Origin: Lytechinus pictus
Lineage: Eukaryota
NCBI RefSeq assembly: GCF_037042905.1
Contig: NC_087247.1
Coordinates: forward strand, 27,838,001 to 27,902,000
Length of the DNA: 64,000 bases
Reading direction: 5' to 3'
Position 1 is the stretch's first letter. Each line of letters begins with the position of its first letter. Below, in pieces: positions 4,201-28,200 of the stretch. A program made the translations under genes and the position numbers. The notes beneath the pieces are model-generated. The model was not told the DNA's origin, ran no database searches, and saw nothing but the letters and a program-made list of their open reading frames with translations.

Positions 4201-7200
4201 GCACCTGACTGGATCCGACACTGTATTTTACATGTTTGACATAAAATGCTCAGGTCATCTTTATATATCTTCTTAATACCTAGTTCCCACTGTCAAAGTT
4301 TGCGCCACGATTAAAATGGTGGTTTCAATTGTGGAAGTAATTGAAGTGATCGCACCAGATCAATCATGGCAATCTTATTGATTGTAGAAAATGTATCAAC
4401 GGTTCAGCAATTTTTTGTGATCACCTACGATAGGCCAATCGTGGGGATAGTACAGTGGGACAAAGTATTAGTCCCTCTTACCTTGCATTTCTTCAGCCGT
4501 TTTGTCATTTTCCACCTGCTTGGCCTGCCCCTTGGTGATTACCCATAATGCCCCTTTTGCTGCGTCTGATACGTTTGATTCCGGGGATTGCGTGAGCGAC
4601 TCCAGGAGCTTCACACATTCTCCGTTCTCAACAATCTTCTGACGGCCTTCATCCGAGAAGGCCAGATTCCATATAGTATTGGCAGCAGCTTCTTGGGTGT
4701 CCGTGCTCCTGTCCTTTAGCATCTTGACCAACAGAGGGAGCCCTCCAGCTTCTAGAATCTGTTGATTAAATTGGAATTTTTTTTTACATTCTCTTAATCA
4801 ATCTCATGGGCCAAGTTTGTCTAATAGGACTACTACGGGACCAAACTATGATAATTACAATGTTGATGGTGTGAAGATTTATATTACGGGACTTTAATTT
4901 CAATTTCAATTTCATTTCAATTTCCAATATCAGTTTCAGTTCCAATTTCAATTCCAATCTTAAAGTTGACATAAGAAGGAAATAAATATCCTGGAATATG
5001 GTATGTAAGGAAAGCATATTACATATATAATCTGTTTATCCACATATAATACCATAAAAGTCGTCTGGCACCTTGGTATCCTCCACTAAAATGCCTCCAA
5101 AATAGCATCTCTAACGAGCCAGGAAACTTCTCACGATTTCCACCTCAGTCTATGTGACGTCACGTCATGCCTGCCCTCTCATTATGTTCCCCGGATGTTC
5201 CACATAAAATCATACACAGAGCTCCAGAAAATGTTTTCCTTTTTTTTTCAAAAGTTAAAAACTCAGCTAAATAATGGTTGTGTACATATTCCTTTGCCTT
5301 ATATATATCGCTGATATAATAAATAATAATTATCGGGCTTACGATTTCGAAATATTTGCGGAAACATTCTTTTATGTCACATTTTCTTCACTCATTTTTA
5401 TTTTTTTGTGTGTTGAAATCTTTGAACGTTCGTGTGCCGAAGACCGGCCTGACTTTGAAAGTAGATCCGGTCGATTGCTTTCCCCCGCCCCCAAGCTCTA
5501 CGTACACGTGCGGTGTTTGTTTACATTTGTTTCGACTCTCGCTTTCTGCTTTATACTGGATCACGCGCTAGAATGGAACAGAACGATCTTTTTATGGATT
5601 TTGAGGACTTTCAAGAGGAAGGTGAAGAGGAAAGTGATGAAGAGAGCTACGAGGACGACGGTAGTTGGGAGGACGCGTCAACGAGTGAGGAAGGAGAAGA
5701 CGATGGAGAAATCGGAGAAGAGGGAGTCGTTGACGATGACTATAACGCTCCTATGCCAGCCGCAGCCACCGAGGCCAGCGCCAGGGGAACGGCCCGCCTA
5801 GGAGCCGAGGGAGCACCCGATGTTCCGCAACCGTATCTCCATGAACCACCACCGAGACAAGATGACGATGATGGCCTTTTTAACGACGGAGATGCTCCCC
5901 GGGATGTCGATCCTCATCGGTTAATGAATAATGATTGGTTAGTTATTGTCTAATTATCTGACTTAGCTTAGAGACTCCATTCATTTACTAATAATACCAC
6001 GTTTCTTAGTTGCTTGCCTTTGTGACTTAGTCACTGTCACTTGTCAATTTGACGGACAGTGTCAGTGTCTCTCAGGCTCAGCTAGCTCAGTTCGTTCAGT
6101 CGGGATTGAAATATCATTAGATCTTATTCGTTAGTGGCTACAATTTTTTCTGTCATTGTGTGTATTTGAGTTTTGTCAGACGTGTATCAATCAGATATGA
6201 TTATTTACGTCTGGGACCGACCTTTAACGTCACCATCCGAAAGATGGTGACGTAACCAGTAATTTTAATTTGAATGTAAAAGAAAATAAAAACGATAAGG
6301 TTATATCACCGAGCAAACGCTTTTATGGAATTTAAAAAAAATAATTCACCCAACAAGTCCGAAGCTGAGCTGAGTGAGACTTCAGTACCGGTAGTAGCCC
6401 AACACTATTCAGCACCTGCGAACAATTTTATTGCCACGTTTTTCTTTAAAATTTATCTTACATGAAGGATGGTAGAAAATTGACTAGTGTATGCATTGAA
6501 TACATTTAGGAGGTACAAACATGATGTAATAAGTATCGCATGAGGTCTGCTTTATATTATTATTAGCTCTAATATGTCAAGTCTCTTGCAAATATACAAT
6601 TGACCCCCCCCCATGGAATGGAGAGCACCACTACAGCACTAGTTTTGTGTTAAAATTTGATCCAGATGAGGTGTTGTCCACAAACAGCGTATCTTCATCT
6701 ACACGTACCCACTGCCAGGATTTTTCAAGGGGGGGGGGCACATTTCCCCAAAAAAAATTGACAAACAAAATGAAAAAAAAAATACTCGCTTTCAAAGGGA
6801 GGGGGCACGAGTCAGATGTGCCCCCCCCCCCCCCCTCCCTCTGGATGTGCCAGTGCCCACTGCACATAATTTGCATCTTTTCCCCAAAATATCTCATAGA
6901 CTTACATTGCATTAAAATCCGCAGGCAAGAGGAGTCTAAAAAAGATGATTAATACTGATGTTTCTTCTTTTTTTACTTTTAGGTGTCTATGTGGTGGCCA
7001 CTGCAGGGTGGAACCTTCATTCTCTGCAGGTGACAGCACATGTTGCAGGGAGATTCCTGAAGTTTCATTTGAAACGGACGCTTTAGGCGTAGACTGTCTC
7101 ACTACAACAGAGGCGTTTGAGTCAGCCATCCTGAACCCAATATCTTTATATATTGGATGGATGGAGTACACGGACAGGTGGAGGCGAGCAGCCAGGGCCT

Positions 7201-10200
7201 TTGGTAACCGAAACAATGAGTAAGTATCATGGTCATTGACATGGACTTTACCTCCTTACTAGATAATGTATAGCCTTCAACAGTAATCAGAAAAATTTTG
7301 TTCTTGATTAATATATTTTCTGTGCATTAGTTTTCAAAGAGGCAGGGTAAAATGAAATTATTTGGGGTTATGCAATGTTTGACATATTAACCAGGAAATT
7401 AGTGTAATTATTTTTGTGTCTAAGCTGGATATTTGTTTTTTTTTTCAATTTGAAAGAAAGTTTTTAAAATAGGAAGACTTTTTTAAGCAGGCACTTTATC
7501 AGGTACATGTAGTGTCATGCTCTTCATGTATTTTTATTTACATGTATGGACCTGACCAAGCATGGTAAATTGACAATGTCTCTTACATGTACATGTTTTT
7601 TTTCTGATGGTGTTACAGTAATAAAAACTTGGGGTTTATATCATTCTTGCGGCAAACAAAAAATTGAAGGGAATTTCAAACCATTGCATACATGTATTTC
7701 TGGTTTTAGTATTTTAATTTAAGTCTCTCTTTACATTAATCTTCTGTATTTTTATTTTGCAGGAAATACAGATATGTGGCTTATAGAAAAGTTGTCCGCT
7801 GGTGTTGGGGTTTTCTCGGCAAAGACATAAGGGTGCAACTACCTGCCTGCATACACTCAAAAATCATGCGAGCCTATCCTGATGGTGCTGGAATTTACAA
7901 GGGGACAGTTCTGCGAGTATTGAGAAGATAAATGACTTATGTATATATATATCATAATTTTGTTTTGGCAGTTTTTTGCTACGTTTCAGCACTCAAAATG
8001 CAAAGCTCTGTACATTGATCAGTATTTGAAGATGCCATCCATTAAATTTTAAATGTTTGAAAGTGTACTTACATGAACCTTATATATGTACCTTCACTCA
8101 CATGTAGTTATCTTCTGATTTTGATGTTACTTACATCAGTGTGCATGTCTCTCTATACTGTATAATATAATGAGTTAAATTGACTGTATAGATGCATTGT
8201 TCATTCTGCATGTAGAACTGGTTTCTACTTACTAAATTTGTTATTTGTTTAAGTGGATTTGGAATTCAGAGTTTTCAAGACATGTTCGGACCTTAGGGGT
8301 TACATTATTTGATATGTCATATTATCAAGTACAGTTCATTATTTTCCTTGTTTTGATTATTATCATTAGCATTAGGCCTACATGTATGATTTATCTTTAT
8401 AGGAAAACATTTACATGTCTCATCTATTGGAAATCAAAATGTAAATGGTTTGCAGGTGAAAAAATCCTGCATTTGATGGTTTTTAATAATTATTTTTTAG
8501 AATTATATATAGTAACAATTGTAAATATAATAAGGATACATTGTACAGGTGAAGTTACTTGTCGAATGGTCATTCTGTATTGACGTACATGTAGCTGTGC
8601 AGATATTGATTTTTAGTCCATTATCTGTTTCAAAATATTGAGTTATATATGTTTAATTCCTGTATGGAAAGCAATGTTTTTGTGTTGCATCTTAATACCA
8701 TGAGAAAGTGATAACATACATTTATTCCCATCTCAGAGTGTAATTCAGAGTAAAATTGTTTTTAAAGAAGTTTCATTAGACAAAAACATTAGTTAATGGG
8801 TTTATGGACTTGCACAATGTATTCTAACTTCGTCATCTTCATCAGTTTGTTATTGCTTAGCTGTTTGGGTGCCTGGTAAATAATGTAATGTCTTTTCTTC
8901 CTGTTGCAGATATTGATAAATGAAGTCATTTAATTGTTTAAAAGGCCATATATCTTTTACAACTGTACTTGTATTTTGAATTCAAAATAATTTGAAATGT
9001 ATTGGATCGAACTATCTTGGTATATGCCTTCTGTGATTGTAATATTGAACTATGGTCCATGTATATTTTGCTTTATTTTGATGGTGTTTTTTTTTTATTT
9101 GCGTCTAGTCAAAGTCATTTGGGAATTACATGTAGATATGTATTTTCTTGCTTTTTCCAAGGCCCTTCTACTTGGAAATCAAGTAATGAAGATGAGTTAG
9201 TTTGCCTTTTGTAATGTACATGTAGATGATAATTCTGAAGAAACAAATAGACTTATTAGGAATTTTGAAATTTCCTGTCTGAATTTTTTTTCTTTTGATG
9301 AATGATGCTTAAATGATTGTTGATGTAAATTACAGGGCAATTCTATAAAATATGTGCGTCCGAACCCCTATATTTGGGACCTTCCTGAAATTTTCTGTCT
9401 CTGATTTTTGGTTCTTTTGACAGTCTGAAATGCTGTCAAATGACCATGACTTGGCCAATTTATCAAGTGAAGACTAGAAAAATTAGGTCGGATTTTCAAA
9501 AAGGTTTATCATTTTATGGAATTGCCCTACATATTTATGTGTGCTTTATGAAAGGGATCACAATGTTCAAGACTTTCTTGGGAAGCATAGAACCCCATTT
9601 CTAGCTTTCACACTGAATTGGACTGCACATTCAATATGAAAATTAAGTTTTCTTTCGTACTCATTTTCCTTTCACAAGGAATATTCAGTTTCAGTAGCAA
9701 GTACATGTACAAACCAGAAATTTAATTTCATTATTCAAACATCCCTAGGAAGTCTTGAGCATTCTATGACTGTTCTAATAGAGGAATAGATACGGTAATT
9801 GTGTTTTATAAGATGATGATTTGAGGGAAGTGGTGATGTGCTGCACTGCTGATGCTGCTATTATGAGTGTTGATACAGAGGAAAAGTGAGCAATAGATAA
9901 CGGTGGCTGTGATGAAAATGAAGACGACCAAGCATGAGAAGTGAACATGTCAAATATAAGATGCAGTGGATCCTATTAAGTTACTGCTGGTAGCAGAACA
10001 CACACTTTTTTTAAAACTCCAGAGCAACAGAGCTTGTCATTGGGACACTTACATATTGTGAAGTGACATTGGAGGATTTTGTGCTAACTTTTTGTGAATT
10101 TTTTGGAAATTTTTGTTGAAAAATGTAAATTTTCAAAAATTTAGGGAGACCCCCCCCCCCCCCTGCTGTGTATGGGCATTGGTACCAAGGTACTTAAAAA

Positions 10201-13200: not shown

Positions 13201-16200
13201 CCAACAATAGGTAGGAATCACAGGGTGCCACAGGTACTTGTTTGAGAGCTTTCCTTCCAGGAATAGATAGGTTAATGTTCACAATGTCATCTCTACTCCT
13301 TTGAAAATCGACGATGTACCTGTAACTGATCAATGGCCTCTGCTTTACTTGGACGATCAACTCCTGAGCACAATGGTGGCTTTCCCTCCAGTTCTGGGAT
13401 GGTAGACCGGATCTTTTGTTTTCCAGACACTAGTTGCATTGTCTCTTCCATGAGTGTTCTCACATAATCTATGAAAAAAAATATATCAATTTCAAATGTA
13501 TTTAGTATCTAAAAGTCACAAGAAAAAAAAAAAAAAAAAATCAAAATTACATGTAAGTAAAGAAAAATAAGCAAGAAGCACTTGCTTCTCTTCTATTATA
13601 TGCAATGTGAAAATGAAACAAATACAGAAAATACAAAACCTTGTGAAAATCTGCTTAATAATAAAAAAATAAAAAAATCTTATAATCGCATTACATTGCC
13701 ACCATGACATGCACTGGCATATCATTCAGGAGGCAAATGAATAAACACACGCATGGCAAGTATTTCTAACAATGCAGATCTCTATGTGAACTGTCTTTAG
13801 GATACTTCTTCATAATTTATTGATTTTATTACCTTACAAAATATCAATCACCTAGAGTACAGACGACAAAATTCATAAGTACATACACATTAACATAAGA
13901 CCCCCTATTTTCTAACAATTATTTTACAGGGGAAGGGAGGTTGAAATATACTCACTGAATGTGCAAGCTGTCAACACTTTGGAAACTGTGTGGCCGCCTT
14001 CTTTGGCTTTGGGGTAATTGATACGGTACATAGGTGTCCCATCTGCCTTAGTTGCATGACTTCGACCAGCATTCTCATTCCAGTGCAAGGCGGCAAGATG
14101 TAATCTACAAATAATCAGAGTACAAAGAAAAAAATAAAATAATAACTGTAATCGATTTTAGTACAAGATGTTCTCTACCACGATATCACTATTGGGCTTT
14201 ATACATGTACAGTACATGTAGACATATCATGACTAATATGTAAAAACTTTAATCTATTTTATTAAAACTATGACAAAGCTTTTCTTCAAGAATATGATGA
14301 AGAATAATATAGAAATCTTTGTAATGAGGTTGAGGGCCATTTACTTTCAATCACCGCTTCGGTCAAGCACGTATTTCCACACTCATTCAACCCAAAAATC
14401 AACTACATAGACTTGCAATTTTTTTTACCTGCACTTCATCCCGGCATATGAGTAGGCCAGCATCTTAGGACACCAATAGAGCATCACACTATGAAAGGCC
14501 TCGACTGAACTGGTCTGGTCAACAGGAGACATTTTCTTCATGTCATTCAACAGTCTGGTTTTTGATAGTTCCTCAGACAACTTTTCAAACGGTTTCGTAC
14601 CTGTGAATTTAAAAAATAAAACAGGAGTTAGGCGAGGCGTCAAAACCCCAAATGCGTTCCAACGCGTGCATAGCCATTGTTCCATAATGAGAGTGTGCAA
14701 AGGAGTTCCAAGAGATTAGTACGAAGTACCGTTATATTCTACATTAAAGCTAATTTGCATAATCCGTACACGCTGGGGAACGGGGCAATTATTATCTCGA
14801 TCGCTATTGGCTAATCCGCCGGAGCGTCGCACGAGAATACACTGAATAGTGCAGGTTCACATACACACACACACACACAGCGCGCCAGCGTACACTTCAC
14901 ATAAATTGAGGTCAGTGTTCGGCGTGCACGTCGGATCAACATTTGCAGCGAAGCTTTGCAGCGCGTGAGGTGCGGGCGGATCTACGAGAGGGGGAATATA
15001 GGCGAGCGGCGAGAGGCCAAAATTTGGGACTTTAATCCCCCCGACTGGATCAAAGCAAAAACATGCATCATTTTGAAGGAAATTTTCAGAATTTTTTAGA
15101 ACTGAGAATTAAAAGTGTCGCACAGTGTAGCTTCACCATGGAAACCAGCCTTGAATAGGCCACGCCCATTTTTGTGATAAATGCAAAGCAGTAACTTATC
15201 ATTTATATTTGTTAATTAATTACACTAATTTATATATGAATATAGACTTTACGAGGATAAAATCACTACAGATTGAATGATATGATAACGGCTAGCAACC
15301 AAATATATATTTCATCTATATTTGATTTCAAAACTGTTGCCTAGCAACATTTTTTCCCTAGCAACCATATTCATTTTTCAATATTCTCTTATTTTTTGAC
15401 CAGATTAATTCATTTTATCATTTTTTTTTAGTTTTTAATTTGTAAAAACTAATGAAGAAGGTGAATTTTGATGAAAAAGGGATAAAAGAGGATAACTAGG
15501 ATGTATAATGCATTAATGATCATGAAAAATTACATTATTGCCATGTTTGATTAACCCCTGCATGTGACGGATATCACTAATATGTTTGTGTGTATTTACG
15601 ACTATATCGGCATCATTTTATGGATTTTATAATATTGTTATAAATCATTCTTAGATACCCTGCTGTGTCACGTTATCTGTTCTAATCTAAATAATAGAGT
15701 ACTTCATAGATTTTTCCGTTACCTATGGAAACCATTGTGTTGCCTAGCAACAGCATTTTCTCTAGCAACCATCACTTTTTGGTGATATTTCAAGCCTGTA
15801 ACCTCCCAAAAAATTCCCTTTTTTGTCCTCAAAATGCATCTTATATTATTCTAAGCATTTATGACAATTAGTTTCACCCATCTGGTCAGGCAGTCGGCAT
15901 ATTGAGAGAGGGCATGGCTGTATGCAGACATTTTTTTCCTTGGGGTGGCAAAACGATTAAAAAAATTCCAAGAAACAAAGCGAGGGAGCGAAGCTACTGA
16001 GTTTGGCAAGGGGCGCTTTTTCAGTAAATTGAAGGATATCTTGCACACTTTTGGTGAATTTTGTGAAAATTTTCAGTTTAAAAATGTAACCTTTCACAGC
16101 ATACGGCAATGGGAGAGGAAATGGGTAGTTTGTTATTTGGAACTTTTTATCGTACATGTTAGGAAGGGAAATACATATCCAAGACCATTCAATAAGTTTT

Positions 16201-19200
16201 AAAGTGTCTGCAATGGGAAAACAAAATTATTTATCAGTATGGCAAATATAATTACTAAACTGTAGTGATTGTGAACTCAAAAGCTAATTACTTTTGGGGG
16301 TACCTACTAAAATGTGTAAATCACAATGCTCTATCAAAGTTTTTATCTGCAATTCTGGCATTTTTCCTGTGTTGCAAGGTTCCCCCCCCCTTTTTTTTTT
16401 ATCATACCAATGCATGGGCAATGGGACAGTTAACACAATAGACTACTTGCAGACCTTCAAGCTGTATTGCTGGTTTATCTGCACAACCTGGTGAAAAAAA
16501 GCTTTCCAATGATCACCTGCCCTGATTTAAACACAGATCAAGAGATCTTCAGTATGTCGTAAATCTATCAAGTAGACAACAAAAATTACTCTAATCTGAG
16601 CCTGTTGCTCACTAAAACCGGTTAGTCCCTATACATTCTTTATGGGCATTACTGATTTCAGCAGTTAATTAGCAGGTCAAATATCTGTTTAAGTAGAATT
16701 AATTAGGAGTAGGCCTCTCATCAAGCTAACGGGCAAAGTCCTAACCATTGAAGTTATGAGTATTTATTTAAGTTCTTTCTATAAACCTCCTAACCAATCT
16801 TCCTCCCTTCCCCGAAAAGCCATCTCCGATCGAGGAAATGTAATTATTGGGGATTTAAACAGTTACAGCATTATCTGGGGGTATGGATAAACCAATGAAA
16901 TGGAAAACTTGAGGAGAACTGGTCAGATGCAAATCAGATTGCATCACCGAACAAAATGTGAGAAGGTTGTGCTTGACCCTCTCCCGCACACTCAACATCG
17001 ACCGATTGGGCTGAAGGTGAATGCAGACATCACTCCACGCACAGTTCCCTTTCACAGACGTTTCACCCTGAAGAAAGCAATCTGGGAGCAGTTTGTCATA
17101 TATCCGAATACCTACCCACAGGATCTTCCAGCACTCCGTACTCATTACGACACATTTGGAAAGCTGTTGAAGAAATCATCACATAAAAATATTCCACGAG
17201 GAGGCCGTATACAAACTATTCTCCTGGCTTGACGGATGACGAAGCTGCTGTACAATAAAATTTTCAGGAGCTTTGAGAATTACCCCTTTGGTGCCGATAC
17301 ACTTGAATGTGGGGGGAAATAGACAACTGCCATTATGGATAGTAACAAAATAAAGTGACAGTGATTTAACAAATCAATGGATATGACTCACTACAGCAGA
17401 AAAGCCAGGAAAACAATTCGGATCATTGAAAACGACTATGCGACTATATCTCAAACTATACCCCTAGTGACCACCGACCAAGTGACCCACTATCTTCTTG
17501 TGTACAGTCATGGTCACCCTATTTATTGCCCGCGAAGGGCCAACCTCCCTAAAAGAGCAGAGACAGCGTCCCAACTGAAGAGTCATTTGAAAACACAAGA
17601 CAATTCAGCATGAACGTCTTGTCTGCTTGTGCTATGCTATTATAATGAAGAGCAACAAGGAACCTGGATTAGATGTCCTCTGTGAGCAGATCACACTTCT
17701 TGGACCTGTTGCAGCCCAATGGCTGCTGACATATTAATCGACTGTTTGCATGAAAAAAATATGGCAAGAGGAAATTGAGGGTAGTTGCCTAACTCGAGCT
17801 AGGCAAAGACCCAATCAGCCCAAGGAGTTACAGAACCATCTCTCTACTCTGTCACACACACAATCCCTTTGAAAGGCTCCTGCTTAACCGCATTGCTCCC
17901 TTTGTGACTGAGTTCCTCATTCAAGTAGGCAAGATTCAGGCCAGGAAAGTCCTTTACTTATCAAGTACTGAATCTGACTCAGTACATCAGATGGTTTGAG
18001 GAAGGTCTGAAAACTGGAGCAGCCTTTGTTGACTTCTCTGCAGCTTATGAACCAGTTAATCATAGGGTAGGCCTACTTACGAGGAAAGTCATTGTGATGA
18101 CAAAGGACGTCAAGTTGACAAGGCTAATTCAGAACATGCCCCCAAACCGGTTGTTTGTGAATCTCAGTGGTTCCAGCAGCAAATGGTGGAGGCAGAAAAA
18201 TGGTCCCCCACAAAGAATTGTCCTTGTCCAAATACACAAACGACCAACTAATCCACCCAAACACCAAGAGCTACCTATGCTGATGAACTGTGCATTGCCT
18301 CATAAAAGCAGAAGAGGTGGAAAAACATTCAGTGATGCTCTGGCATATCTGACTCTTTACTATCCAGAGAAAATCCAACTTAGCGTCTTCCACCTTAACA
18401 ATAGAGATGCAGACCGGAAACTGCTGGTCAGATGGTGTTGAAACTTGAAAGTGAATGAAACATGCCAGCAAGCCTGCCTACCTTGACGTCACTATTGCGT
18501 ACAAAGAACATATTGCCGAGACAAAGGCAAAAGCTGGAGAAAGGAACAACATCAAAAAGAGGCTTGCTAACACGATATGGGGAACAGATGCCAAACCATC
18601 CGTTCAAAAGCTCTGCTGTACGCTTCAAGTTTAACCCAATCCTCAATGCTGCTTGCAGAGCAATTTCCGACTGTCCGCTACCAAAAGAGAAGATGATCTT
18701 TACCTAGTGTGTGGCACAGTCCCCCACACATAGAGGTATCAGAATGGGTGGAAAAACAAGCAAAGAAAAATATGTCCTTCTTCCACTCTTTAACTATGAA
18801 CCTGCCAAAAAGAGACTCGAATCCTTCACTTCACTTGACTGAATCCCTTGATGGCTATGCACACAGTCAAAGGATCCCCCTATAATGGTCAAACCACCTC
18901 CAGTCTATGACGCAAAAGCTTTCCATGTGACCTAGCGAATCACGCCCCCGGGTTCAAGTGACGAATGGTCATCCTGACTATGTCTTAATCGCCTATGGTC
19001 TGGATCAGGAAGGTGCAAGTCCTTAATATGCAGTTCGGGGCTACAGCAGGGATGCAGACACTATCTACGACTGAGGGGAAGATCAGACAGTGCATCACCT
19101 TTTGGTTTGCACCCCCCCCCCCCACCAGAGCCGTGCGCTTCCAAAGATCTGGGGCCCGTTTCATAAAGAGTTACAACTGTTGTAACTTTGCCATTATGGC

Positions 19201-22200
19201 AACTACCATGGCAACCTTGATTCTGATTGGCTGATGAGCCCTGTTACCATGGTAGTTGCCATAATGGCAAAGTTCCAACAGTTGCAAGTCCTTTATGAAA
19301 CGGACCCCTGGAGTCGTTCAACCCAAAAGCCAGATCTTGCATGAACCCTCTACTACACAGGACTTGTGTAGTGACCCGAGAAGATGGGCACAGAGCAAAT
19401 ATTGCCCTTTAAAACCATGCAGTATACTATGACCAAAGAGAGCCTAGGTGTGCAGGAGTTTGTCTCTCCAAAAGGTGGCTTTTTAAGGGGGTATGTAGAT
19501 ATGGGGTAAGATTGTTAGCATCGAATGTCTTTGCTCATTCACTGGCAAATTGTAATTTTCACCTTAAAACACTAACAATCAGAATATAGGCACCTTTTCA
19601 GCAAAGTTTTAGCCTAACCGACAACCCCATCAGGAACCAATTAAGTCCCTGCTCCCTCCCCCATCAAACAACCCTTGAGCAAATAATCATTTTTCCCCAA
19701 ATGTCAGATTACCATAAATAGGTGTCTTCTACCAGTAAGATAATTAATGACAAACTTCTTCTTAGGTCACTACAGATGTCGTGTCCTGTTAATGGTACAA
19801 GAATTACATGATATTTTCCTGTGAAAAGACTCTCGTGCAGTGGCAAAGGCAGTGGCAGTTCATAGCTCTGGTAGGAGGGAGCAGACACAAAAGTTTTGTA
19901 TCCTATGATCATCCTTACAGTTACAGGTAGTTTCTCCTGCCCTATTGTAGCCCCATAGGCGATTCAAACGAGATCAGGTAGGCCATTCTTCACTTGGACC
20001 TGGATAGTGATGTACTAAGTCCATAGGTGAGATTGTGCATCACAGACTGGAGATTGTTAGACCAGAGGGTGACGCTTTCATGCGTGCAGAGTCATCAAGG
20101 GATTCTGTTGAGCGGAGAAAACTGTGTCTAGATTTGAGTCTCTTGGCAGGTTCATGGTTGACGAGTGGAATACTATGTTCTTGATTTTTTTTTCTTTCAT
20201 CTGTGCTGATGACTTCTCTTCTGACGTACGGTGGGGCAATAATACAGAGTAGGTAAAGATTACCCACTTCTGTTAGTCGCAAACAGCCAGTGATGGCTCT
20301 GCAAGCTCCATTCAAGACTTGGGGTCAATATAGCAGCAAGGGCTGCATACTCAGCAGTGGAGAAGCATAGAGCAAGAGCTGTGGTACAGATAGATTTGGC
20401 ATCTGTCAATTCCCAATCTGTCTCCCAGCTTCTTCAGAATGATATTCCTTGCTCCAAATTTTGCATTTGTTTTGGCAGCATGTTCTTTCTATGAAAAAAG
20501 GTCTAGAATGACGCCAAGGTAGGTTGGCTTTTTACCACCTGACCCTCAGGTTTTGATCTGCTCTCTGTTTTTAAGGTGGAATACACTCTTATTGGGGGGT
20601 CTTTTTGGAGATGATTTATAGGACAGTAAGGAGTTAGACTTGCCAGATCATCACTGAGTTCGTTTTGGCACACTGATGATTGATTATTACTTTAGAGATT
20701 ATTGCACAGTTCAATGTTTTCCCACTCCATTCAAGCAGCGATACAAAATTATGGCTGTAATTTAGATGTTCCAGCCTTATTATATGAACAAATCATCATT
20801 ACAAATACAGATTAGTATGTTTTAGCAATACTGTAGGGGTATCATCCCAATTACATCAGTTTTAGATATATTCTCAGACATATTTCTTATACCATGGATG
20901 TCTTTAAAGATTTACATTACTTGATACTTGATGTAGTGATCCCTTTGGCAGCTCATACAGAAGCTATACTGGGATGATGAATAAAGTGAGCCACTGGAAG
21001 GAGCATCATGAAGTGCAGAAATGGTGATGGATAGACATAGCAATTTTTTATATGTACAGTTAAACATGCTATGCTGAGTGCAAGTAAAAACCAAGCTTTT
21101 GAATTTAAATCATTTGGGATCCAACAGGGGGCTGCATCATTCTGATGGCAGGGAGAGCAGCCTCCTTGAAACTGGGCATTCCTTTGGTGTTGGCAGCTGA
21201 GCTGGGTAGGTTGTTCCAGTTCCTTATCGTTCTTGGATAGAACGAGAACTTGAAGGGGTCGATTGTGGCTTCAGGTATGATGTACTTCAAGTTGTGATCA
21301 TGTCTTGTATAAAATGTTGCTGGGGTGACGATAAGTGGAAGAGTTATGAAGACATGATGGTAGTGGATTTTGTGAAAGAGGGAACATTGGGCAAGGATTC
21401 GGCGTGTGTGTAGTGCATCCAATTCCAATGACGTCACAAGAGATGAAGGTGATGTGGAAATCCTGTAGTCCGAGTACACGAAGCGAGCCGCTGATCTTTG
21501 TACTTGCTCAAGCAGGATTCCAGGCCTCACAGCCATATACTAGTTGGGGGCGCACTAAGGATGTGTAGGCACTCGACTTCACATCTCTTGTACAAGAGGA
21601 AAGAGTCCAAGAGTACGACTTGCTTTCTGCCGGACGAATTGGCAATGCTTGTTCCATCGCAGATCAGAAGAAACTGTAACACCCAAGTAATTGTAGTTGC
21701 TAGCTCTAGGGATTACACTATTTGTCAGATGATACTGCTGGATGTTGGGAGTGCATTTGCGTGATCTAAATCTCCATGGAACGAACAGTAGCGTTAGTGT
21801 AAGCCCGACAATAGTGGCATGTGTACCTGTTTTTCCCGAAGCTTTTCTCGAAGCTTTGTCGATGTCCTTTACATGTGTATGCATGTTGAGAGGAATCCTT
21901 TTCTTTCAGACATCTTTTCTTAAACTGAGTATTTAAGGCATCAGTTTTTAACATCCGGAGTCACTGACACTATCGCTGTAGCAGAAAATACCTGAAGGAC
22001 AACATCAAAGACCACTTAAGCTGATATGCCTCCTCTCCATATTTAGGGACTTTTCTTGTATGCCCCTCCCTTGTTGTCTCAATAGATGTGTGCAAACATC
22101 ATGCCATATTACATAATGACACTTATATAGACATAGAAAACATCTCCCAATTTAGTAAGCCTTTCTATCTTTCATGGTTTTCTTGGCCTTTTCTTGGCCT

Positions 22201-25200
22201 AATCAGGAATGATAGCTCAGTCGATAGAGCGGGGGTTTCGGATTCCGGTGACCTTGATTTGATTCCCACTTGGTACATTAGTGCTCTTTTGTAAGGCGCA
22301 TCCTCATTACCATGTTACCAGGTTTTGGAGAGGACATTAAGCTGTCGGTCCTCTGGGTTGTTTGCTTACAAGCATTCATGCTTTCTTAGTAATCAGGTAA
22401 ACAACCATCATATTAAGTCTTAAGATCCCAGGTTTTCATACTTTCATCCCTCTGATTTCTTGAGTTATCAAATTGAAAGTGACATGAAAAGTTCCCTGTG
22501 ATTTAACTTCTGACACTTTAATAGTATTAAAGTTTCAACAGAAACTTGTCGAACTCACAACTTTGGCATCTTTGGGCTACAGCCTCCACCCAGACACAAC
22601 CTTGGAAGTTGGACATGCATGGGTGATTAGGTATTATTTGACAAAACAGATCCATTTGTTAACCATTCCATATTCACTCGAGGAAAGTGATCTGAATATG
22701 CAGCCAAAAGCCTCTGCCAATGACTTAATGGAGTATAGGACGTCCCTGAAATTGAAAAAAAATATCTGTACAAGCCTTAGGTGAAGACCCACTTTATGAT
22801 CAAATCAGGGACTGTGCCTGAAGAGTAGTGTTGTCCATTCTAATATATCATCAATGCTATACCTACTGTAGCACACTAAAAAAATGTTATGTACCCAGCT
22901 ATGAATCCTCCAAACCATATTATTCTCTTTTTATCTTCAACATTTAAATTTCTCTTTAAAGCTGCTCTTTTATGTATGATAAGTTTAAATGCCATGCTCA
23001 TCGCACTGTTTAGAATTGGTAGACAAGCAATATACAAACAAGGATAAATGATTTTTTTTAGAAATAAGAGAAATGAAGTGGTGTCCTTTAATTTACCATT
23101 GCCAGTATGCATGTAGGTATATTATTGAAAGGGATGGTCCAGGCTGGATAATCTCTATATCTCAACTAATAGAGTAAAATTCACAAAGCAAAATGGTGAA
23201 AATTTGATCAAAATCGGATAAGAAATAACAAGTTATTAAATTTTAAAGATTTGCATTATTCCGGTGAAACAGTTTTATGTATATCTTTATGAATATTCAT
23301 TAGGTGGGCTGATGATGTCATATCCCCACTTCTTCTTTTGTAATTTATTATATGAAATTAGGTTTATTCAAAATTGTTCTACCAAGAACTAAAACAATTG
23401 GATTGACAACTGATTAAGTACATTAGTTATTATTGCCGCAAATTATTTCATCATAATGCAGACACATCATTTACGCATGTATGAAATAATGAAACATTTA
23501 GGATTTCATGTATTAATATAAGAAAAAGGAAAGTGGGGATGTGACATCATCAGCCCACCTAATGAATATTCATGACGATGTGCATATAACTGTTTTAAAA
23601 AATATTGATAAACTCTAAAATTCAATAACTTTGTTATTTGTTATCCGATTTTTAAGAAATTTTCAGCATTTAGCTTTGTGAATTTTACCCTATTTATTTA
23701 AATAGAAATATTTTCAGCCTGGACCATCCCTTTAACAAATAGTACTGCACACTTAAAAGTGGATTATTTTCCTCAAGATTTTTAAGGGGAAAAATACATC
23801 GTTGCTAAGGTAAATAGTGTTGCTAGGCAATGGAACTGTGTCAGTAGATAATGGTACAACTCCGGAATGCTGTTTGCCTATCGATAACAAACTATCATGT
23901 TAATTTTCTCAATATTTTTACTCTAAGGCACAACTTCCTCAGCACATTTGGCCGAGAGGAAGAGTGGTAACATAGCCGTTGCTAGGGAATATTGTTTCTA
24001 GGCAACACCTTTGTCTCCAAGGAAGCTATAAAATAGTCAGTTTGTTGAATGATTATTGAAAACGAGGTTGTAGGCATCTATATGATAATTGTGTCAGTAT
24101 TATTGCTCATAATGGACTATTTTTCCACAGATTTGTCCAGGGAAAAGAGTGTTAACATAGTCGTTGCTATGGAAAATAGTCGTTGCTAGGCAATGAATTG
24201 GTATCCATAGGTAATATGAAATGGTCATTTTGTTGTTGTTCTATTGAAGACAAGATACTACATGTTAATTGATCAGGTATTATTAACTCAATCAACTTTG
24301 TCACCACAAAATATAAAGTATGTGACTTGTACATACATGTTTCAATGCACGCAGTCAAAATGAACATAATATGGCGATTTGTACAATGTGAAGGGGTATG
24401 TCAGTTAGAGCTTAGCAAATTTATTTGAGGTTCGCAATGGTTAAAATGGGGGTTTTCAGTTCTTTTTATTATTTTTCAATGATACTTCATAGAATTTCAT
24501 TGGTGTAATTTATTTGGTTTAATTTAACCTAGTTAAAAAGTTGAAAGTTAGGTTTGAAATGGAAAAATAAGTGGTTTACTTAAGGAGCTAAATGGTTGCT
24601 AAGGAAATTTTTGTTGCTAGGCAACAGTTTCTGAGAAAATGTTCATAAAATTCATGCTAAGTTGTTTTTCAGTAATTCTTCTTACAATATATAGTGGATC
24701 TATCCTTTGAAAATAAGAAAAAATACCTGATAATTCAAATTAATGAGTAAAAAATCAATATTCACAAGAAATATTCAATAAGTATTTAAAATGGGCGTGG
24801 CTTATTCAAGGCTGGTTTCCATGGTGATGCTACACATTACACCATTTTTAATGCCCAATTCCGAAAAATTCAGAAAATTTCCTTTAAATTGATGTATGAT
24901 TTTGCTTTGATCCAGCCGGGGGGATTAAAGTCAAGAAATAAGGCACTTTTTGGCTTCTGGCCGCTCACCTAATAGGGGTTGCCTGGGGCTAGCTTCCTGT
25001 ACAAAGTAGGCCCTACCAATTAAAAAAAAAAAATCCGTGTTTACGAGAGTCGCGCAAGCAAAACGGTGGCGGATTAGGACATGCTTTTAAATTGTTTTGA
25101 GGGGCGAACGAGTGAAAATATATTTTGTATACCTTTCGTTATGAACTCCCGTTCTCCATGACGAAATATAATTGACGAAAGGAAAGTAAAACAGAAAAGA

Positions 25201-28200
25201 AGTCACAAACATCTCAGAATAGTTTGCGATCTATCAGGACATGTTTTAAAATTGATTTTAGGTATCAACAAGTTAAAATATATTTGATATACCTTTCGTT
25301 GTGATCCCTTGTTCTCCGTTAAGAAATATTAAATACGTCTTTTCTCGACGATGTTGGAAACGTAAATAAAACAGAATAGAAGTCACAAACATCTCAGATG
25401 GGTGTGCGATCTATCACAACATGTTTTAAAGCTGTTTTTAGGGGTCAACAAGTTAAAATAGATTTGATATACCTTCCATTATTATCCCCTGTTCTCCGTA
25501 AAGAAATATTAAAGATGCATTTTCTCGACAAAGTTGGAAACGTCGATAAAACAAAATAGAAGTTGGTAGCATCTCATATTTATTGGTGATACATATTTTT
25601 CGAGGGGTCAACAAGTTAAAATATATTTGATATACCTTTCGTTGTGATCCCTTGTTCTCCGTTAAGAAATATTAAATACGTCTTTTCTCGACGATGTTGG
25701 AAACGTAAATAAAACAGAATAGAAGTCACAAACATCTCAGATGGGTGTGCGATCTATCACAACATGTTTTAAAGCTGTTTTTAGGGGTCAACAAGTTAAA
25801 ATAGATTTGATATACCTTCCGTTATTATCCCCTGTTCTCCGTAAAGAAATATTAAAGATGCATTTTCTCGACAAAGTTGGAAACGTCGATAAAACAAAAT
25901 CGAAGTTGGTAGCATCTCATATTTATTGGTGATACATATTTTTCGAGGGGTCAACAAGTTAAAATATATTTGATATACCTTTCGTTTTGATCCCTTGTTG
26001 TCCGTTAAAAATATCAAATACGTCTTTTCTCGACGATGTTGGAAACGTAGATAAAACAAAATAGAAGTCACAAACATCTCAGATGGGTGTGCGATCTATC
26101 AGGACATGTTTTAAAATTGTTTTTAGGTGTCAACAAGTTAAAATAGATTTGATATACCTTTCGTTATGATCCCTTGTTCTCCGTTAAGAAATATTAAATA
26201 CGTCTTTTCTCGACGATGTTGGAAACGTAGATAAAACAAAATAGAAGTCACAAACATCTCAAATTGGTGTGCGATCATTCAGGACATGTTTTAAAATTGT
26301 TTTTAGGTGTCAACAAGTTAAATTATATTTGATATACCTTTCGTTGTGATCCCTTGTTCTCCGTTAAGAGATATTAAATGCGTCTTTTCTCGACGATGTT
26401 GGAAACGTAGATGAAACAAAATAGAAGCCACAAACATCTCAGATGGGTGTGCGATCTATCAGGACATGTTTTAAAATTGTTTTTAGGTGTCAACAAGTTA
26501 AATTATATTTGATATACCTTTCGTTGTGATCCCTTGTTCTCCGTTAAGAGATATTAAATGCGTCTTTTCTCGACGATGTTGGAAACGTAGATAAAACAAA
26601 ATAGAAGTCACAAACATCTCAGATGGGTGTGCGATCTATCAGGACATGTTTTAAAATTGTTTTTAGGGGTCAACAAGTTAAAATAGAGTTGATATACCTT
26701 TCGTTATGATCCCCTGTTATCCGTTAAGAAATATTAAAGATGCATTTTCTCGACAAAGTTGGAAACGTAGATAAAACAAAATAAAAGTCACAAACATCTC
26801 AGATGGGTGTGCGATCTATCAGGACATGTTTTAAAATTGTTTTTAGGTGTCAACAAGTTAAATTATATTTGATATACCTTTCGTTGTGATCCCTTGTTCT
26901 CCGTTAAGAGATATTAAATGCGTCTTTTCTTGACGATGTTGGAAACGTAAATAAAACAGAATAGAAGTAAAAAACATCTCAAATTGGTGTGCGATCATTC
27001 AGGACATGTTTTAAAATTGTTTTTAGGTGTCAACAAGTTAAATTATATTTGATATACCTTTCGTTGTGATCCCTTGTTCTCCGTTAAGAGATATTAAATG
27101 CGTCTTTTCTCGACGATGTTGGAAACGTAGATGAAACAAAATAGAAGCCACAAACATCTCAGATGGGTGTGCGATCTATCAGGACATGTTTTAAAATTGT
27201 TTTTAGGTGTCAACAAGTTAAATTATATTTGATATACCTTTCGTTGTGATCCCTTGTTCTCCGTTAAGAGATATTAAATGCGTCTTTTCTCGACGATGTT
27301 GGAAACGTAGATAAAACAAAATAGAAGTCACAAACATCTCAGATGGGTGTGCGATCTATCAGGACATGTTTTAAAATTGTTTTTAGGGGTCAACAAGTTA
27401 AAATAGAGTTGATATACCTTTCGTTATGATCCCCTGTTATCCGTTAAGAAATATTAAAGATGCATTTTCTCGACAAAGTTGGAAACGTAGATAAAACAAA
27501 ATAAAAGTCACAAACATCTCAGATGGGTGTGCGATCTATCAGGACATGTTTTAAAATTGTTTTTAGGTGTCAACAAGTTAAATTATATTTGATATACCTT
27601 TCGTTGTGATCCCTTGTTCTCCGTTAAGAGATATTAAATGCGTCTTTTCTTGACGATGTTGGAAACGTAAATAAAACAGAATAGAAGTAAAAAACATCTC
27701 AAATTGGTGTGCGATCATTCAGGACATGTTTTAAAATTGTTTTTAGGTGTCAACAAGTTAAATTATATTTGATATACCTTTCGTTGTGATCCCTTGTTCT
27801 CCGTTAAGAGATATTAAATGCGTCTTTTCTCGACGATGTTGGAAACGTAGATGAAACAAAATAGAAGTCACAAACATCTTAGATGGGTGTGCGATCTATC
27901 AGGACATGTTTTAAAATTGTTTTTAGGTGTCAACAAGTTAAATTATATTTGATATACCTTTCGTTGTGATCCCTTGTTCTCCGTTAAGAGATATTAAATG
28001 CGTCTTTTCTCGACGATGTTGGAAACGTAGATAAAACAAAATAGAAGTCACAAACATCTCAGATGGGTGTGCGATCTATCAGGACATGTTTTAAAATTGT
28101 TTTTAGGGGTCAACAAGTTAAAATAGAGTTGATATACCTTTCGTTATGATCCCCTGTTATCCGTTAAGAAATATTAAAGATGCATTTTCTCGACAAAGTT

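What the first reader, a model, noticed from the sequence alone, without database searches (positions are those of the whole stretch)
5573..7931. Transposon-borne stand-alone P2X7 ballast domain: possible guanine-nucleotide sensor for transposition
Seen: Cys pattern WCxCxxxC..CC..C..LPAC plus RYxAYR and YKG motifs, behind a very acidic N-terminal region of about 120 aa, with no channel domain. Established: the vertebrate P2X7 ballast binds two Zn ions and GDP/GTP; P-element transposase (also THAP-containing) uses GTP as cofactor. Inference: Kolobok may supply nucleotide sensing on a separate subunit, with the acidic tail acting as a DNA mimic or histone-binding region. The biochemical role of KolX is not known to me.
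Basis: partly seen in the sequence, partly recalled or inferred. Interest (0 to 1): 0.75.

Follow-up and report, generated by a model that had tools for sequence, protein, structure and literature searches.

The report
KolX ballast gene of Kolobok transposon
This small, spliced sea-urchin gene is the already described "KolX" partner gene of a Kolobok cut-and-paste transposon; it folds like the zinc-binding tail of the P2X7 receptor but keeps only one of that tail's five GDP-contact residues, so the proposed GTP-sensor role is not supported by sequence and remains untested.

Summary
Window 5573-7931 (+) is a three-exon gene for a 256-aa protein. It has a 121-aa hyper-acidic, disordered N-terminus (net charge -37) and a P2X7 ballast domain, with no channel part.

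- **Family and fold:** Pfam P2RX7_C scores E 4e-11. All seven Zn cysteines are kept. The AlphaFold model matches only P2X7 structures (VIA Z 10.4-11.5).
- **Transposon context:** the gene lies inside a 37.4-kb element flanked by TTAA, with AG...CT termini. It faces a THAP/DDE transposase. I found the same convergent pair in 7 of 7 loci from five echinoderm species and a brachiopod.
- **Prior publication:** that KolX is a ballast fold and the likely source of the P2X7 tail was published by Kojima & Bao in 2022 (PMC9587614). Stand-alone sea-urchin ballast proteins were described by Rump et al. in 2020 (PMC7016195). This scan had also found KolX on at least five other pieces of this genome.
- **GTP-sensor idea:** of the rat GDP contacts R546/H547/R574/R578/K583, this clade has R/Y/H/M/D. 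It has lost even the R578 that other KolX-like proteins keep.
- **Selection and expression:** the domain is under strong purifying selection (pN 0.12, pS saturated). A spliced RNA contig exists.
- **Most likely role:** a zinc-scaffolded partner of the transposase, with its ligand unknown.

Already known; low interest.

The parts
4960..4963 (.). Left TTAA target-site duplication
   Evidence: Read directly. It is matched by a TTAA at 42365-42368.
4964..4978 (+). Left terminal inverted repeat, AGTTGACATAAGAAG (5'-AG terminus)
   Evidence: The inverted match 4956-4978 against 42372-42350 is 91% over 23 nt, E 4e-4. Contigs from other copies stop matching the window at 4971 (records 1 and 7).
5153..5169 (.). 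Subterminal 17-bp TGACGTCA-containing box, repeated in inverted orientation at 42158-42174
Evidence: A 17/17 inverted match lying about 190 bp inside each end.
5407..5572 (+). KolX 5' UTR, as far as the RNA contig reaches
   Evidence: The spliced 2212-nt contig X1 record 4 begins at 5407.
5573..5937 (+). KolX exon 1: acidic disordered N-terminus (residues 1-121) and the first two bases of the W122 codon
   Evidence: Net charge is -37 and pLDDT is below 50. The YLHEP motif is at residues 88-92.
6983..7219 (+). KolX exon 2: Zn-cysteine cluster (C123, C125, C129, C142, C143, C160) and the first helices of the ballast domain
   Evidence: The splice joint 5936/6982 is seen in contigs.
7763..7931 (+). 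KolX exon 3: basic helices KYRYVAYRKVVRW and LPAC230...YPD...YKG, then the stop codon
   Evidence: This exon alone hits Pfam P2RX7_C at E 1.6e-5. It aligns to rat P2X7 544-590. The splice joint 7219/7763 is seen in contigs.
13293..14603 (-). Last three exons of the Kolobok transposase (open pieces 13296-13463, 13924-14088, 14425-14603)
   Evidence: Homologous to the 3' exons of the THAP-transposase genes in L003 and L004.
14604..35578 (-). Transposase intron swollen to about 21 kb by inserted repeats (180-bp satellite at 25073-28708; 145-nt inverted repeat pair at 15028-15172 and 24788-24932)
   Evidence: The equivalent interval in L. variegatus L003 is about 355 bp. The repeats are shown.
35579..41450 (-). 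Upstream transposase exons: DDE-core pieces 35579-35809, 36090-36470 and 36537-37166, acidic piece 37469-37732, and the THAP exon 40701-41450
   Evidence: Pfam THAP E 1.8e-7 and a weak Mutator-like hit. The open reading frames are listed. tblastn finds them in six other loci.
42350..42364 (-). Right terminal inverted repeat (AGTTGATATAAGAAG on the minus strand; the element ends ...CT)
42365..42368 (.). Right TTAA target-site duplication

Best explanation
The gene is KolX, the second gene of a Kol0-lineage Kolobok DNA transposon. The element spans window 4964-42364, has TTAA target duplications and sits in a sea-urchin (Lytechinus pictus) ARM-TIR gene region.

**Shown**
- The protein has a disordered, hyper-acidic 121-aa head.
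- Behind it is a compact helical ballast domain in which seven cysteines are placed to hold two zinc ions, as in P2X7.
- The last 71 residues are very basic (+14, pI 11.2).
- The domain has stayed under strong purifying selection.
- It always travels tail-to-tail with the THAP/DDE transposase.
- It is spliced into RNA.

**Inferred**
- KolX is a non-catalytic partner that the transposase needs or is regulated by.
- The zinc cluster is structural.
- In P2X7 the two basic helices clamp GDP and also bind calmodulin. In KolX I take them to be a binding face for a phosphate-rich or protein ligand, such as the transposase, the transposon-end DNA or a host factor.
- The acidic head, with its conserved [YW]x[FHY]EP motif, either masks that face in cis or docks on a basic partner.
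- In this echinoderm clade the ligand is probably not GDP/GTP bound in the P2X7 manner.
For: **Identity**
- P0001 equals the three-exon model.
- Pfam P2RX7_C: E 4.4e-11, 43.5 bits against a 23.5-bit cut-off.
- PDB by sequence finds only P2X7: E 1.5e-5 with the single protein and 5e-13 with the family profile.
- The AF2 model has pLDDT 80-96 over residues 110-248.
- The top 14 Foldseek matches are all P2X7, and nothing else scores below E 4.
- VIA Z is 10.4-11.5 with 124-134 residues aligned.
- The seven Zn cysteines are kept in all full-length relatives but one (P0023).

**Transposon context**
- TTAA/AG...CT ends with a 15-bp TIR, as defined for Kolobok in PMC9587614.
- The convergent KolX-transposase pair is present in the window, L003, L004, L005, L006 and L007, with a remnant in L002.

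**Selection**
- For exons 2 and 3 against L. variegatus, 37.6 of 306 nonsynonymous sites differ and 72.4 of 93 synonymous sites differ.

**Expression**
- A spliced 2212-nt contig exists, plus a few sense-compatible raw RNA reads on exon 1.

**Charge**
-.

**Background**
- A soluble ballast domain folds on its own, and its two GDP helices also bind calmodulin (PMC9574498).
Against: - No experiment bears on the function of KolX, and the partner or adaptor role rests on co-inheritance and selection only.
- I could not co-fold KolX with the transposase.
- Raw RNA reads were very few in the two libraries read (depth about 3 on exon 1 in X15, none in X16).
- The spliced contig differs from this copy by several bases and one codon, so another copy or allele may be the expressed one.
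- In S. purpuratus (L002) an intact KolX gene sits beside only a remnant of the transposase, so some KolX genes may live on without the transposon.
- The TTAA flanks cannot by themselves prove one single insertion, because every Kolobok targets TTAA.
Confidence: 0.6

Rival explanations
1. KolX binds GDP/GTP in the ballast pocket and supplies nucleotide sensing to the THAP-containing transposase in trans, by analogy with the GTP-dependent P-element transposase.
For: The fold and the two pocket helices are conserved. R204 (rat R546) is invariant in all 32 relatives and Y208 (rat Y550) is kept in every relative that covers the position. More distant KolX-like proteins keep both R546 and R578 (PMC7016195). 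The isolated human ballast domain binds GDP (PMC9574498).
Against: In this protein and its clade only 1 of the 5 GDP contacts is kept: the residues are R/Y/H/M/D against rat R/H/R/R/K, and K583 is replaced by an acidic residue. The neighbouring R237 that might compensate is not conserved in the clade. No binding data exist for any KolX.
Confidence: 0.12
2. KolX is a brake rather than a helper. It would be a transposon-encoded regulator that sequesters or inhibits the transposase, for example by the acidic head mimicking DNA on the THAP or DDE surface, and so limits copy number.
For: The head is extremely acidic and disordered (net -37). Acidic or Ser-rich heads are conserved in composition across phyla. 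The gene is conserved along with the transposase.
Against: There is no direct evidence. Purifying selection and strict co-inheritance fit a required cofactor at least as well. The conserved short motifs in the head point to specific docking rather than generic polyanion mimicry.
Confidence: 0.15
3. KolX acts on the host rather than on the transposase, for example through chromatin or histone binding by the acidic head. Alternatively, this copy is a domesticated host gene like zebrafish nanor.
For: Nanor and the P2X7 tail are proposed domesticated KolX derivatives (PMC9587614). The S. purpuratus locus L002 has an intact KolX with only a transposase remnant.
Against: This copy lies inside the TIR-bounded element with an apparently open transposase. 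[DE][DE][FYW] histone-chaperone-type motifs are not enriched, 7 observed against 8.7 expected.
Confidence: 0.1

Closest known systems
KolX protein of Kol0-lineage Kolobok transposons (Kapitonov & Jurka; Kojima & Bao 2022, PMC9587614)
   Same: It is the second gene of a TTAA-targeting element with RR...YY termini, encoded beside a DDD/E transposase. It shows sequence similarity to P2X7 residues about 476-595 with seven conserved cysteines.
   Different: There is no difference of kind. This echinoderm clade has an unusually acidic head (net -22 to -37 in most members) and has M or K where other KolX-like proteins keep the R578-equivalent arginine. This copy's element is swollen to 37.4 kb by insertions in a transposase intron.
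Cytoplasmic ballast domain of vertebrate P2X7 (PDB 6U9V/6U9W, 8TR5, 9E3M; Pfam PF20478)
   Same: The fold matches (VIA Z about 11, 124-134 residues aligned). All seven Zn-ligand cysteines are kept, as are the KxRxxAYR and LPxC...[FY]P...YxG helices.
   Different: KolX is not fused to a channel. It lacks the P2X7 segment upstream of residue about 470 at the sequence level. Four of the five GDP contacts are changed. It carries an acidic N-terminal head instead.
Stand-alone ZCD/ballast proteins of Metazoa, including sea urchin, and zebrafish nanor (Rump et al. 2020, PMC7016195)
   Same: It is a short protein made of little more than the Zn-coordinating ballast module, found across Metazoa.
   Different: That paper did not link these proteins to transposons, and it reported R546/H547/R578 as kept in its sea-urchin sequence. 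The clade studied here has Y and M/K at the last two positions.
Second proteins of other two-gene cut-and-paste transposons, such as the Myb-like protein of PIF/Harbinger (from my own knowledge)
   Same: It is a small non-catalytic partner gene inherited with the transposase. This is the working analogy for the proposed role.
   Different: The fold is unrelated. For Harbinger the partner's role in nuclear import and end binding has been shown by experiment, whereas nothing has been shown for KolX.

Membership tests
KolX of Kol0 Kolobok transposons | Encoded inside an element with TTAA target-site duplications and 5'-RR...YY-3' termini | tested here: met
   The left end reads TTAA|AGTTGACATAAGAAG (TTAA 4960-4963, element from 4964) and the right end reads ...CTTCTTATATCAACT|TTAA (element to 42364, TTAA 42365-42368). 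The definition is taken from PMC9587614.
KolX of Kol0 Kolobok transposons | Accompanied by a DDD/E transposase in the same element | tested here: met
   The THAP exon scores Pfam E 1.8e-7. The DDE-core exons are open and are homologous to the THAP-transposase genes beside KolX in six other loci. The DVWH (DxxH) signature and the catalytic residues were read by eye only, not aligned to curated Kolobok sequences.
KolX of Kol0 Kolobok transposons | Similarity to the P2X7 C-terminus with seven conserved cysteines | tested here: met
P2X7 ballast domain (Pfam PF20478 P2RX7_C) | Scores above Pfam's gathering threshold | tested here: met
   43.5 bits against 23.5, residues 116-248 on profile positions 75-190 of 192. 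Exon 3 alone scores 25.4 bits.
P2X7 ballast domain (Pfam PF20478 P2RX7_C) | Ballast three-dimensional fold | tested here: met
   The AF2 model has pLDDT 80-96 over the domain. Only P2X7 chains match it, with Foldseek probability 1.00 and VIA Z 10.4-11.5. This is a predicted structure, not a solved one.
P2X7 ballast domain (Pfam PF20478 P2RX7_C) | Dinuclear zinc site ligands (rat C477, C479, C482, C498, C499, C506, C572) | tested here: met
   C123, C125, C129, C142, C143, C160 and C230 align to them. They are kept in all full-length relatives but one (P0023). Metal content itself cannot be tested with these tools.
P2X7 ballast domain (Pfam PF20478 P2RX7_C) | Guanine-nucleotide pocket residues R546, H547, R574, R578, K583 | tested here: not met
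   The aligned residues are R204, Y205, H232, M236 and D241, so one of five is kept. The residue list comes from PMC7016195.
P2X receptor channel | Extracellular ATP-binding and transmembrane channel domain | tested here: not met
   P0001 has no Pfam hit other than P2RX7_C. The N-terminal 121 aa are acidic and disordered.

The most novel reading that the evidence does not exclude
The echinoderm Kolobok clade shows a KolX that has given up the P2X7-type guanine-nucleotide pocket (R578 to M/K, K583 to D). It nevertheless remains under strong purifying selection, together with a hyper-acidic head and a [YW]x[FHY]EP motif conserved from brachiopods to hemichordates. If so, the ancestral job of the ballast fold would be a zinc-scaffolded docking adaptor for the transposase or a host partner. 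GDP binding in P2X7 would then be a later or dispensable feature.
Probability: 0.25. Interest if true: 0.45.

Novelty: already known. Interest (0 to 1): 0.2.

Why it matters
KolX is the proposed ancestor of the P2X7 receptor's enigmatic intracellular tail, and neither protein has a known biochemical role. A young, open, expressed two-gene Kolobok in a laboratory sea urchin would be a workable system for asking what the ballast fold does. The clade-wide loss of most GDP contacts suggests that nucleotide binding may not be the core function. As a discovery, however, this window only adds another copy of something published in 2020-2022 and already met several times in this scan.

Tried and rejected
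- **Exon 2 searched alone:** Pfam and PDB sequence searches gave nothing significant because the piece is too short. The full-length database protein P0001 settled the family.
- **Histone-chaperone-type motifs:** I looked for [DE][DE][FYW] enrichment in the acidic head. There was none, 7 observed against 8.7 expected from shuffles.
- **[YW]x[FHY]EP motif:** I tested whether it belongs to the Pfam or PDB-alignable part of the ballast. It does not align; Pfam matches start at profile position 52 or later and the PDB profile match starts at residue 473.
- **dN/dS as a ratio:** synonymous sites are saturated in all three comparisons, so only proportions can be given.
- **Repeat in intron 1:** an Rfam scan of 4900-9300, prompted by the highly covered 88-bp module, found no family.
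- **Steps not run:**
  - I did not run the large protein-representative search, because the family was already clear.
  - I could not inspect the pocket geometry, because model coordinates are not exposed.
  - I did not attempt an empty-site test for the 37.4-kb element.
Full report
**Observation**

On the + strand an ATG at 5573 opens a reading frame that ends at a GT donor after 5937. It resumes at 6983 after an AG, leaves at a GT after 7219, resumes at 7763, and stops at TAA 7929-7931.

- Exon 3 alone hits Pfam P2RX7_C at E 1.6e-5, 25.4 bits against a 23.5-bit cut-off.
- Exon 3 also aligns to rat P2X7 residues 544-590.
- Exon 2 alone is too short to score.

To reach a full-length record I queried the word search with the open frame 5465-5950, scored on residues 37-158. 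This reference includes 36 untranslated-leader codons, which brought a 256-aa target inside the tool's length window. The search returned P0001, "uncharacterized protein LOC135153562 [Lytechinus pictus]", 256 aa and 100% identical. Its sequence reads exactly as my three-exon model. Later whole-protein steps, including the alignments built on it, used this database id; the selection test used the exons by reference.

The same two splice joints, 5936/6982 and 7219/7763, both GT..AG, are present in assembled contigs of public runs. One is a 2212-nt contig that starts at 5407 and runs past 8500.

**What the protein is**

P0001 scores E 4.4e-11 (43.5 bits) on Pfam P2RX7_C and nothing else. By sequence, only P2X7 chains in the PDB match: E 1.5e-5 with the single protein and 5e-13 with a 32-sequence family profile.

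The seven cysteines C123, C125, C129, C142, C143, C160 and C230 align with rat C477, C479, C482, C498, C499, C506 and C572. They are kept in all full-length relatives but one (P0023).

An AlphaFold2 model built on alignment A2 has pLDDT 80-96 for residues 110-248 and below 50 for residues 1-110. Foldseek's 14 best PDB matches are all rat, mouse or human P2X7, with probability 1.00, and the next hit is at E above 4. VIA-align gives Z 10.4-11.5 with 124-134 aligned residues and rmsd 3.5-5.1 Å over chain residues about 393-595. The ballast fold is therefore confirmed, on a predicted model.

The charge distribution is strongly split:

| Segment | Composition | Net charge | pI |
|---|---|---|---|
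| Residues 1-121 (head) | 42 D+E, 5 K+R | -37 | 4.05 |
| Residues 186-256 (last 71) | 18 K+R, 4 D+E | +14 | 11.2 |

**Is it transposon-borne?**

Yes.
- A 15-bp terminal inverted repeat, AGTTGAYATAAGAAG with one mismatch, begins at 4964 and at 42364 on the opposite strand.
- Each end is abutted by TTAA (4960-4963 and 42365-42368).
- TTAA duplications with RR...YY termini define Kolobok (PMC9587614).
- A 17-bp TGACGTCA-containing box lies about 190 bp inside each end.
- Contigs from other copies stop matching the window at 4971, which supports the left boundary.

On the minus strand the element carries a THAP exon at 40701-41450 (Pfam E 1.8e-7) and DDE-core exons.

Comparison with the L. variegatus locus L003 showed that the last three transposase exons lie at 13296-14603. 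They are only 5.3 kb from the KolX stop. One transposase intron (14604-35578) is about 21 kb here against about 355 bp in L003. That intron holds a 180-bp satellite and an inverted-repeat-bounded insert. This explains the 37.4-kb size of the element.

The tail-to-tail KolX/transposase pair recurs in every locus I fetched:
- L. variegatus (L003)
- the brittle star Amphiura filiformis (L004)
- a second, distant L. pictus family (L005)
- the starfish Patiria miniata (L006, where the transposase is unannotated)
- the brachiopod Lingula (L007)
- S. purpuratus (L002), where only one transposase exon remnant survives

One caveat applies. Because all Kolobok elements target TTAA, the flanks alone do not prove a single insertion event.

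**Selection and expression**

I handled the exons separately and pooled only the counts. The ballast exons differ from the L. variegatus gene at 37.6 of 306 nonsynonymous sites and 72.4 of 93 synonymous sites. Synonymous sites are saturated, and the S. purpuratus and Amphiura genes give similar figures. The domain has therefore been kept by selection over a long time.

The spliced contig differs from this copy by several bases and one extra codon. One difference is A7035T, which turns S141 into the Cys that the family consensus has (GDCxCC). It may therefore come from an allele or another copy.

Raw RNA reads were sparse. Depth on exon 1 was about 3 in X15 with first mates on the minus strand, and none in X16. 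About 6% of each run was read.

**The GTP-sensor idea**

The rat GDP contacts are R546, H547, R574, R578 and K583 (PMC7016195 citing McCarthy et al. 2019). The alignment around them is gap-free and anchored by KxRxxAYR and LPxC....[FY]P.

| Rat P2X7 contact | This protein | Close echinoderm relatives (P0001-P0014) | More distant KolX-like proteins |
|---|---|---|---|
| R546 | R204 | R | R |
| H547 | Y205 | Y | H, Y or K |
| R574 | H232 | H or Q | V in most (also M, L, T) |
| R578 | M236 | M or K | R in most |
| K583 | D241 | D | mostly S or P (also A, T, D) |

The distant group includes other L. pictus families, Patiria, Diadema, Lingula and Xenopus.

Rump et al. had found that R546 and R578 are the two contacts conserved across Metazoa. 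This clade has lost one of them and has an acidic residue at a third position. R237, next to M236, is not conserved. This weakens a P2X7-like nucleotide site for this protein, but sequence cannot exclude a remodelled one.

**The acidic head**

Acidic or Ser-rich heads occur in most full-length relatives, with net charge from -5 to -37. The trait is therefore old, and it is most extreme in this clade.

The head is not featureless. Short motifs survive saturation of synonymous sites: DLxMDFE, DDGE[IV]GE, NxGDA and RLxxN. A [YW]x[FHY]EP motif lies 31-48 residues before the first zinc cysteine in 17 of 18 full-length relatives, from Lingula to a hemichordate. This motif lies outside what Pfam or the PDB profile aligns.

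Histone-chaperone-like [DE][DE][FYW] motifs are not enriched, 7 observed against 8.7 expected. Nothing tested here speaks for or against a DNA-mimic role.

**Most likely mechanism**

The fold, the zinc ligands, selection, co-inheritance and splicing are shown. It is inferred that KolX is a non-catalytic partner of the transposase. The zinc cluster would be structural.

In P2X7 the two basic helices hold GDP and also bind calmodulin (PMC9574498). In KolX they would be the binding face for a protein or phosphate-rich ligand. The acidic head would mask that face or dock on a basic partner through its conserved motifs.

The rivals are a GTP sensor (about 0.12), a self-limiting brake (about 0.15) and a host-directed or domesticated role (about 0.10).

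**Novelty**

Kojima & Bao 2022 (PMC9587614) state three things:
- Kol0 Kolobok elements encode KolX.
- KolX adopts the cytoplasmic ballast fold with seven conserved cysteines.
- The P2X7 tail and nanor derive from it.

Rump et al. 2020 described the stand-alone domains in sea urchin. A full-text search for ballast + P2X7 + transposon found no later functional work.

This scan's earlier notes report the same gene on at least five other pieces of this genome. I checked their central claims independently here and they hold. The finding is real and correctly read, but already known. The only additions are the clade-specific erosion of the GDP pocket, the conserved head motif, and this copy's swollen transposase intron.

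Noticed in passing
window 6157-6244 (KolX intron 1): An 88-bp module collects about 1000-fold RNA-seq depth in two libraries. Almost every read runs on into sequence unlike the window on both sides, so it is a piece of an abundant transcribed repeat located elsewhere. It has no Rfam match and occurs once in the window.
   Followed up: partly
window 14604-35578: One intron of the transposase is about 21 kb here against about 355 bp in the L. variegatus relative. It contains a 180/360-bp satellite array (25073-28708) and a 145-nt inverted repeat pair (15028-15172 and 24788-24932) that may bound a nested element of about 9.9 kb.
   Followed up: partly
window 7035: This copy has Ser141 where the RNA/assembly contigs (A>T) and most relatives have Cys (GDCxCC). 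The contigs also carry an extra codon after 5741. The expressed KolX may therefore come from another copy or allele.
   Followed up: partly
P0001 residues 88-92 (window about 5834-5848) and relatives: A [YW]x[FHY]EP motif lies 31-48 residues upstream of the first zinc cysteine. It is conserved in 17 of 18 full-length KolX-like proteins from brachiopod to hemichordate and lies outside the region that Pfam P2RX7_C aligns.
   Followed up: partly
L002 (S. purpuratus) 10001-11965 and 14797-14925: An intact KolX gene, whose protein cluster has 26 member sequences, lies next to only a single remnant exon of the transposase, inside a gene with a faint nSTAND NTPase hit. It is a candidate solo or domesticated KolX.
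   Followed up: no
L004 (Amphiura filiformis) 10001-12945: The brittle-star KolX is 71% identical to the sea-urchin protein over the ballast domain although synonymous sites are saturated. This could reflect very strong constraint or old horizontal spread of the element.
   Followed up: no
window 42447-42670: A 103-nt inverted repeat, 98% complementary with an 18-nt loop, lies just outside the right end of the Kolobok. It is hairpin- or MITE-like.
   Followed up: no
window 5153-5169 and 42158-42174: An identical 17-bp box containing TGACGTCA lies in inverted orientation about 190 bp inside both transposon ends. It is a candidate subterminal binding site and is already the subject of another note.
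   Followed up: no
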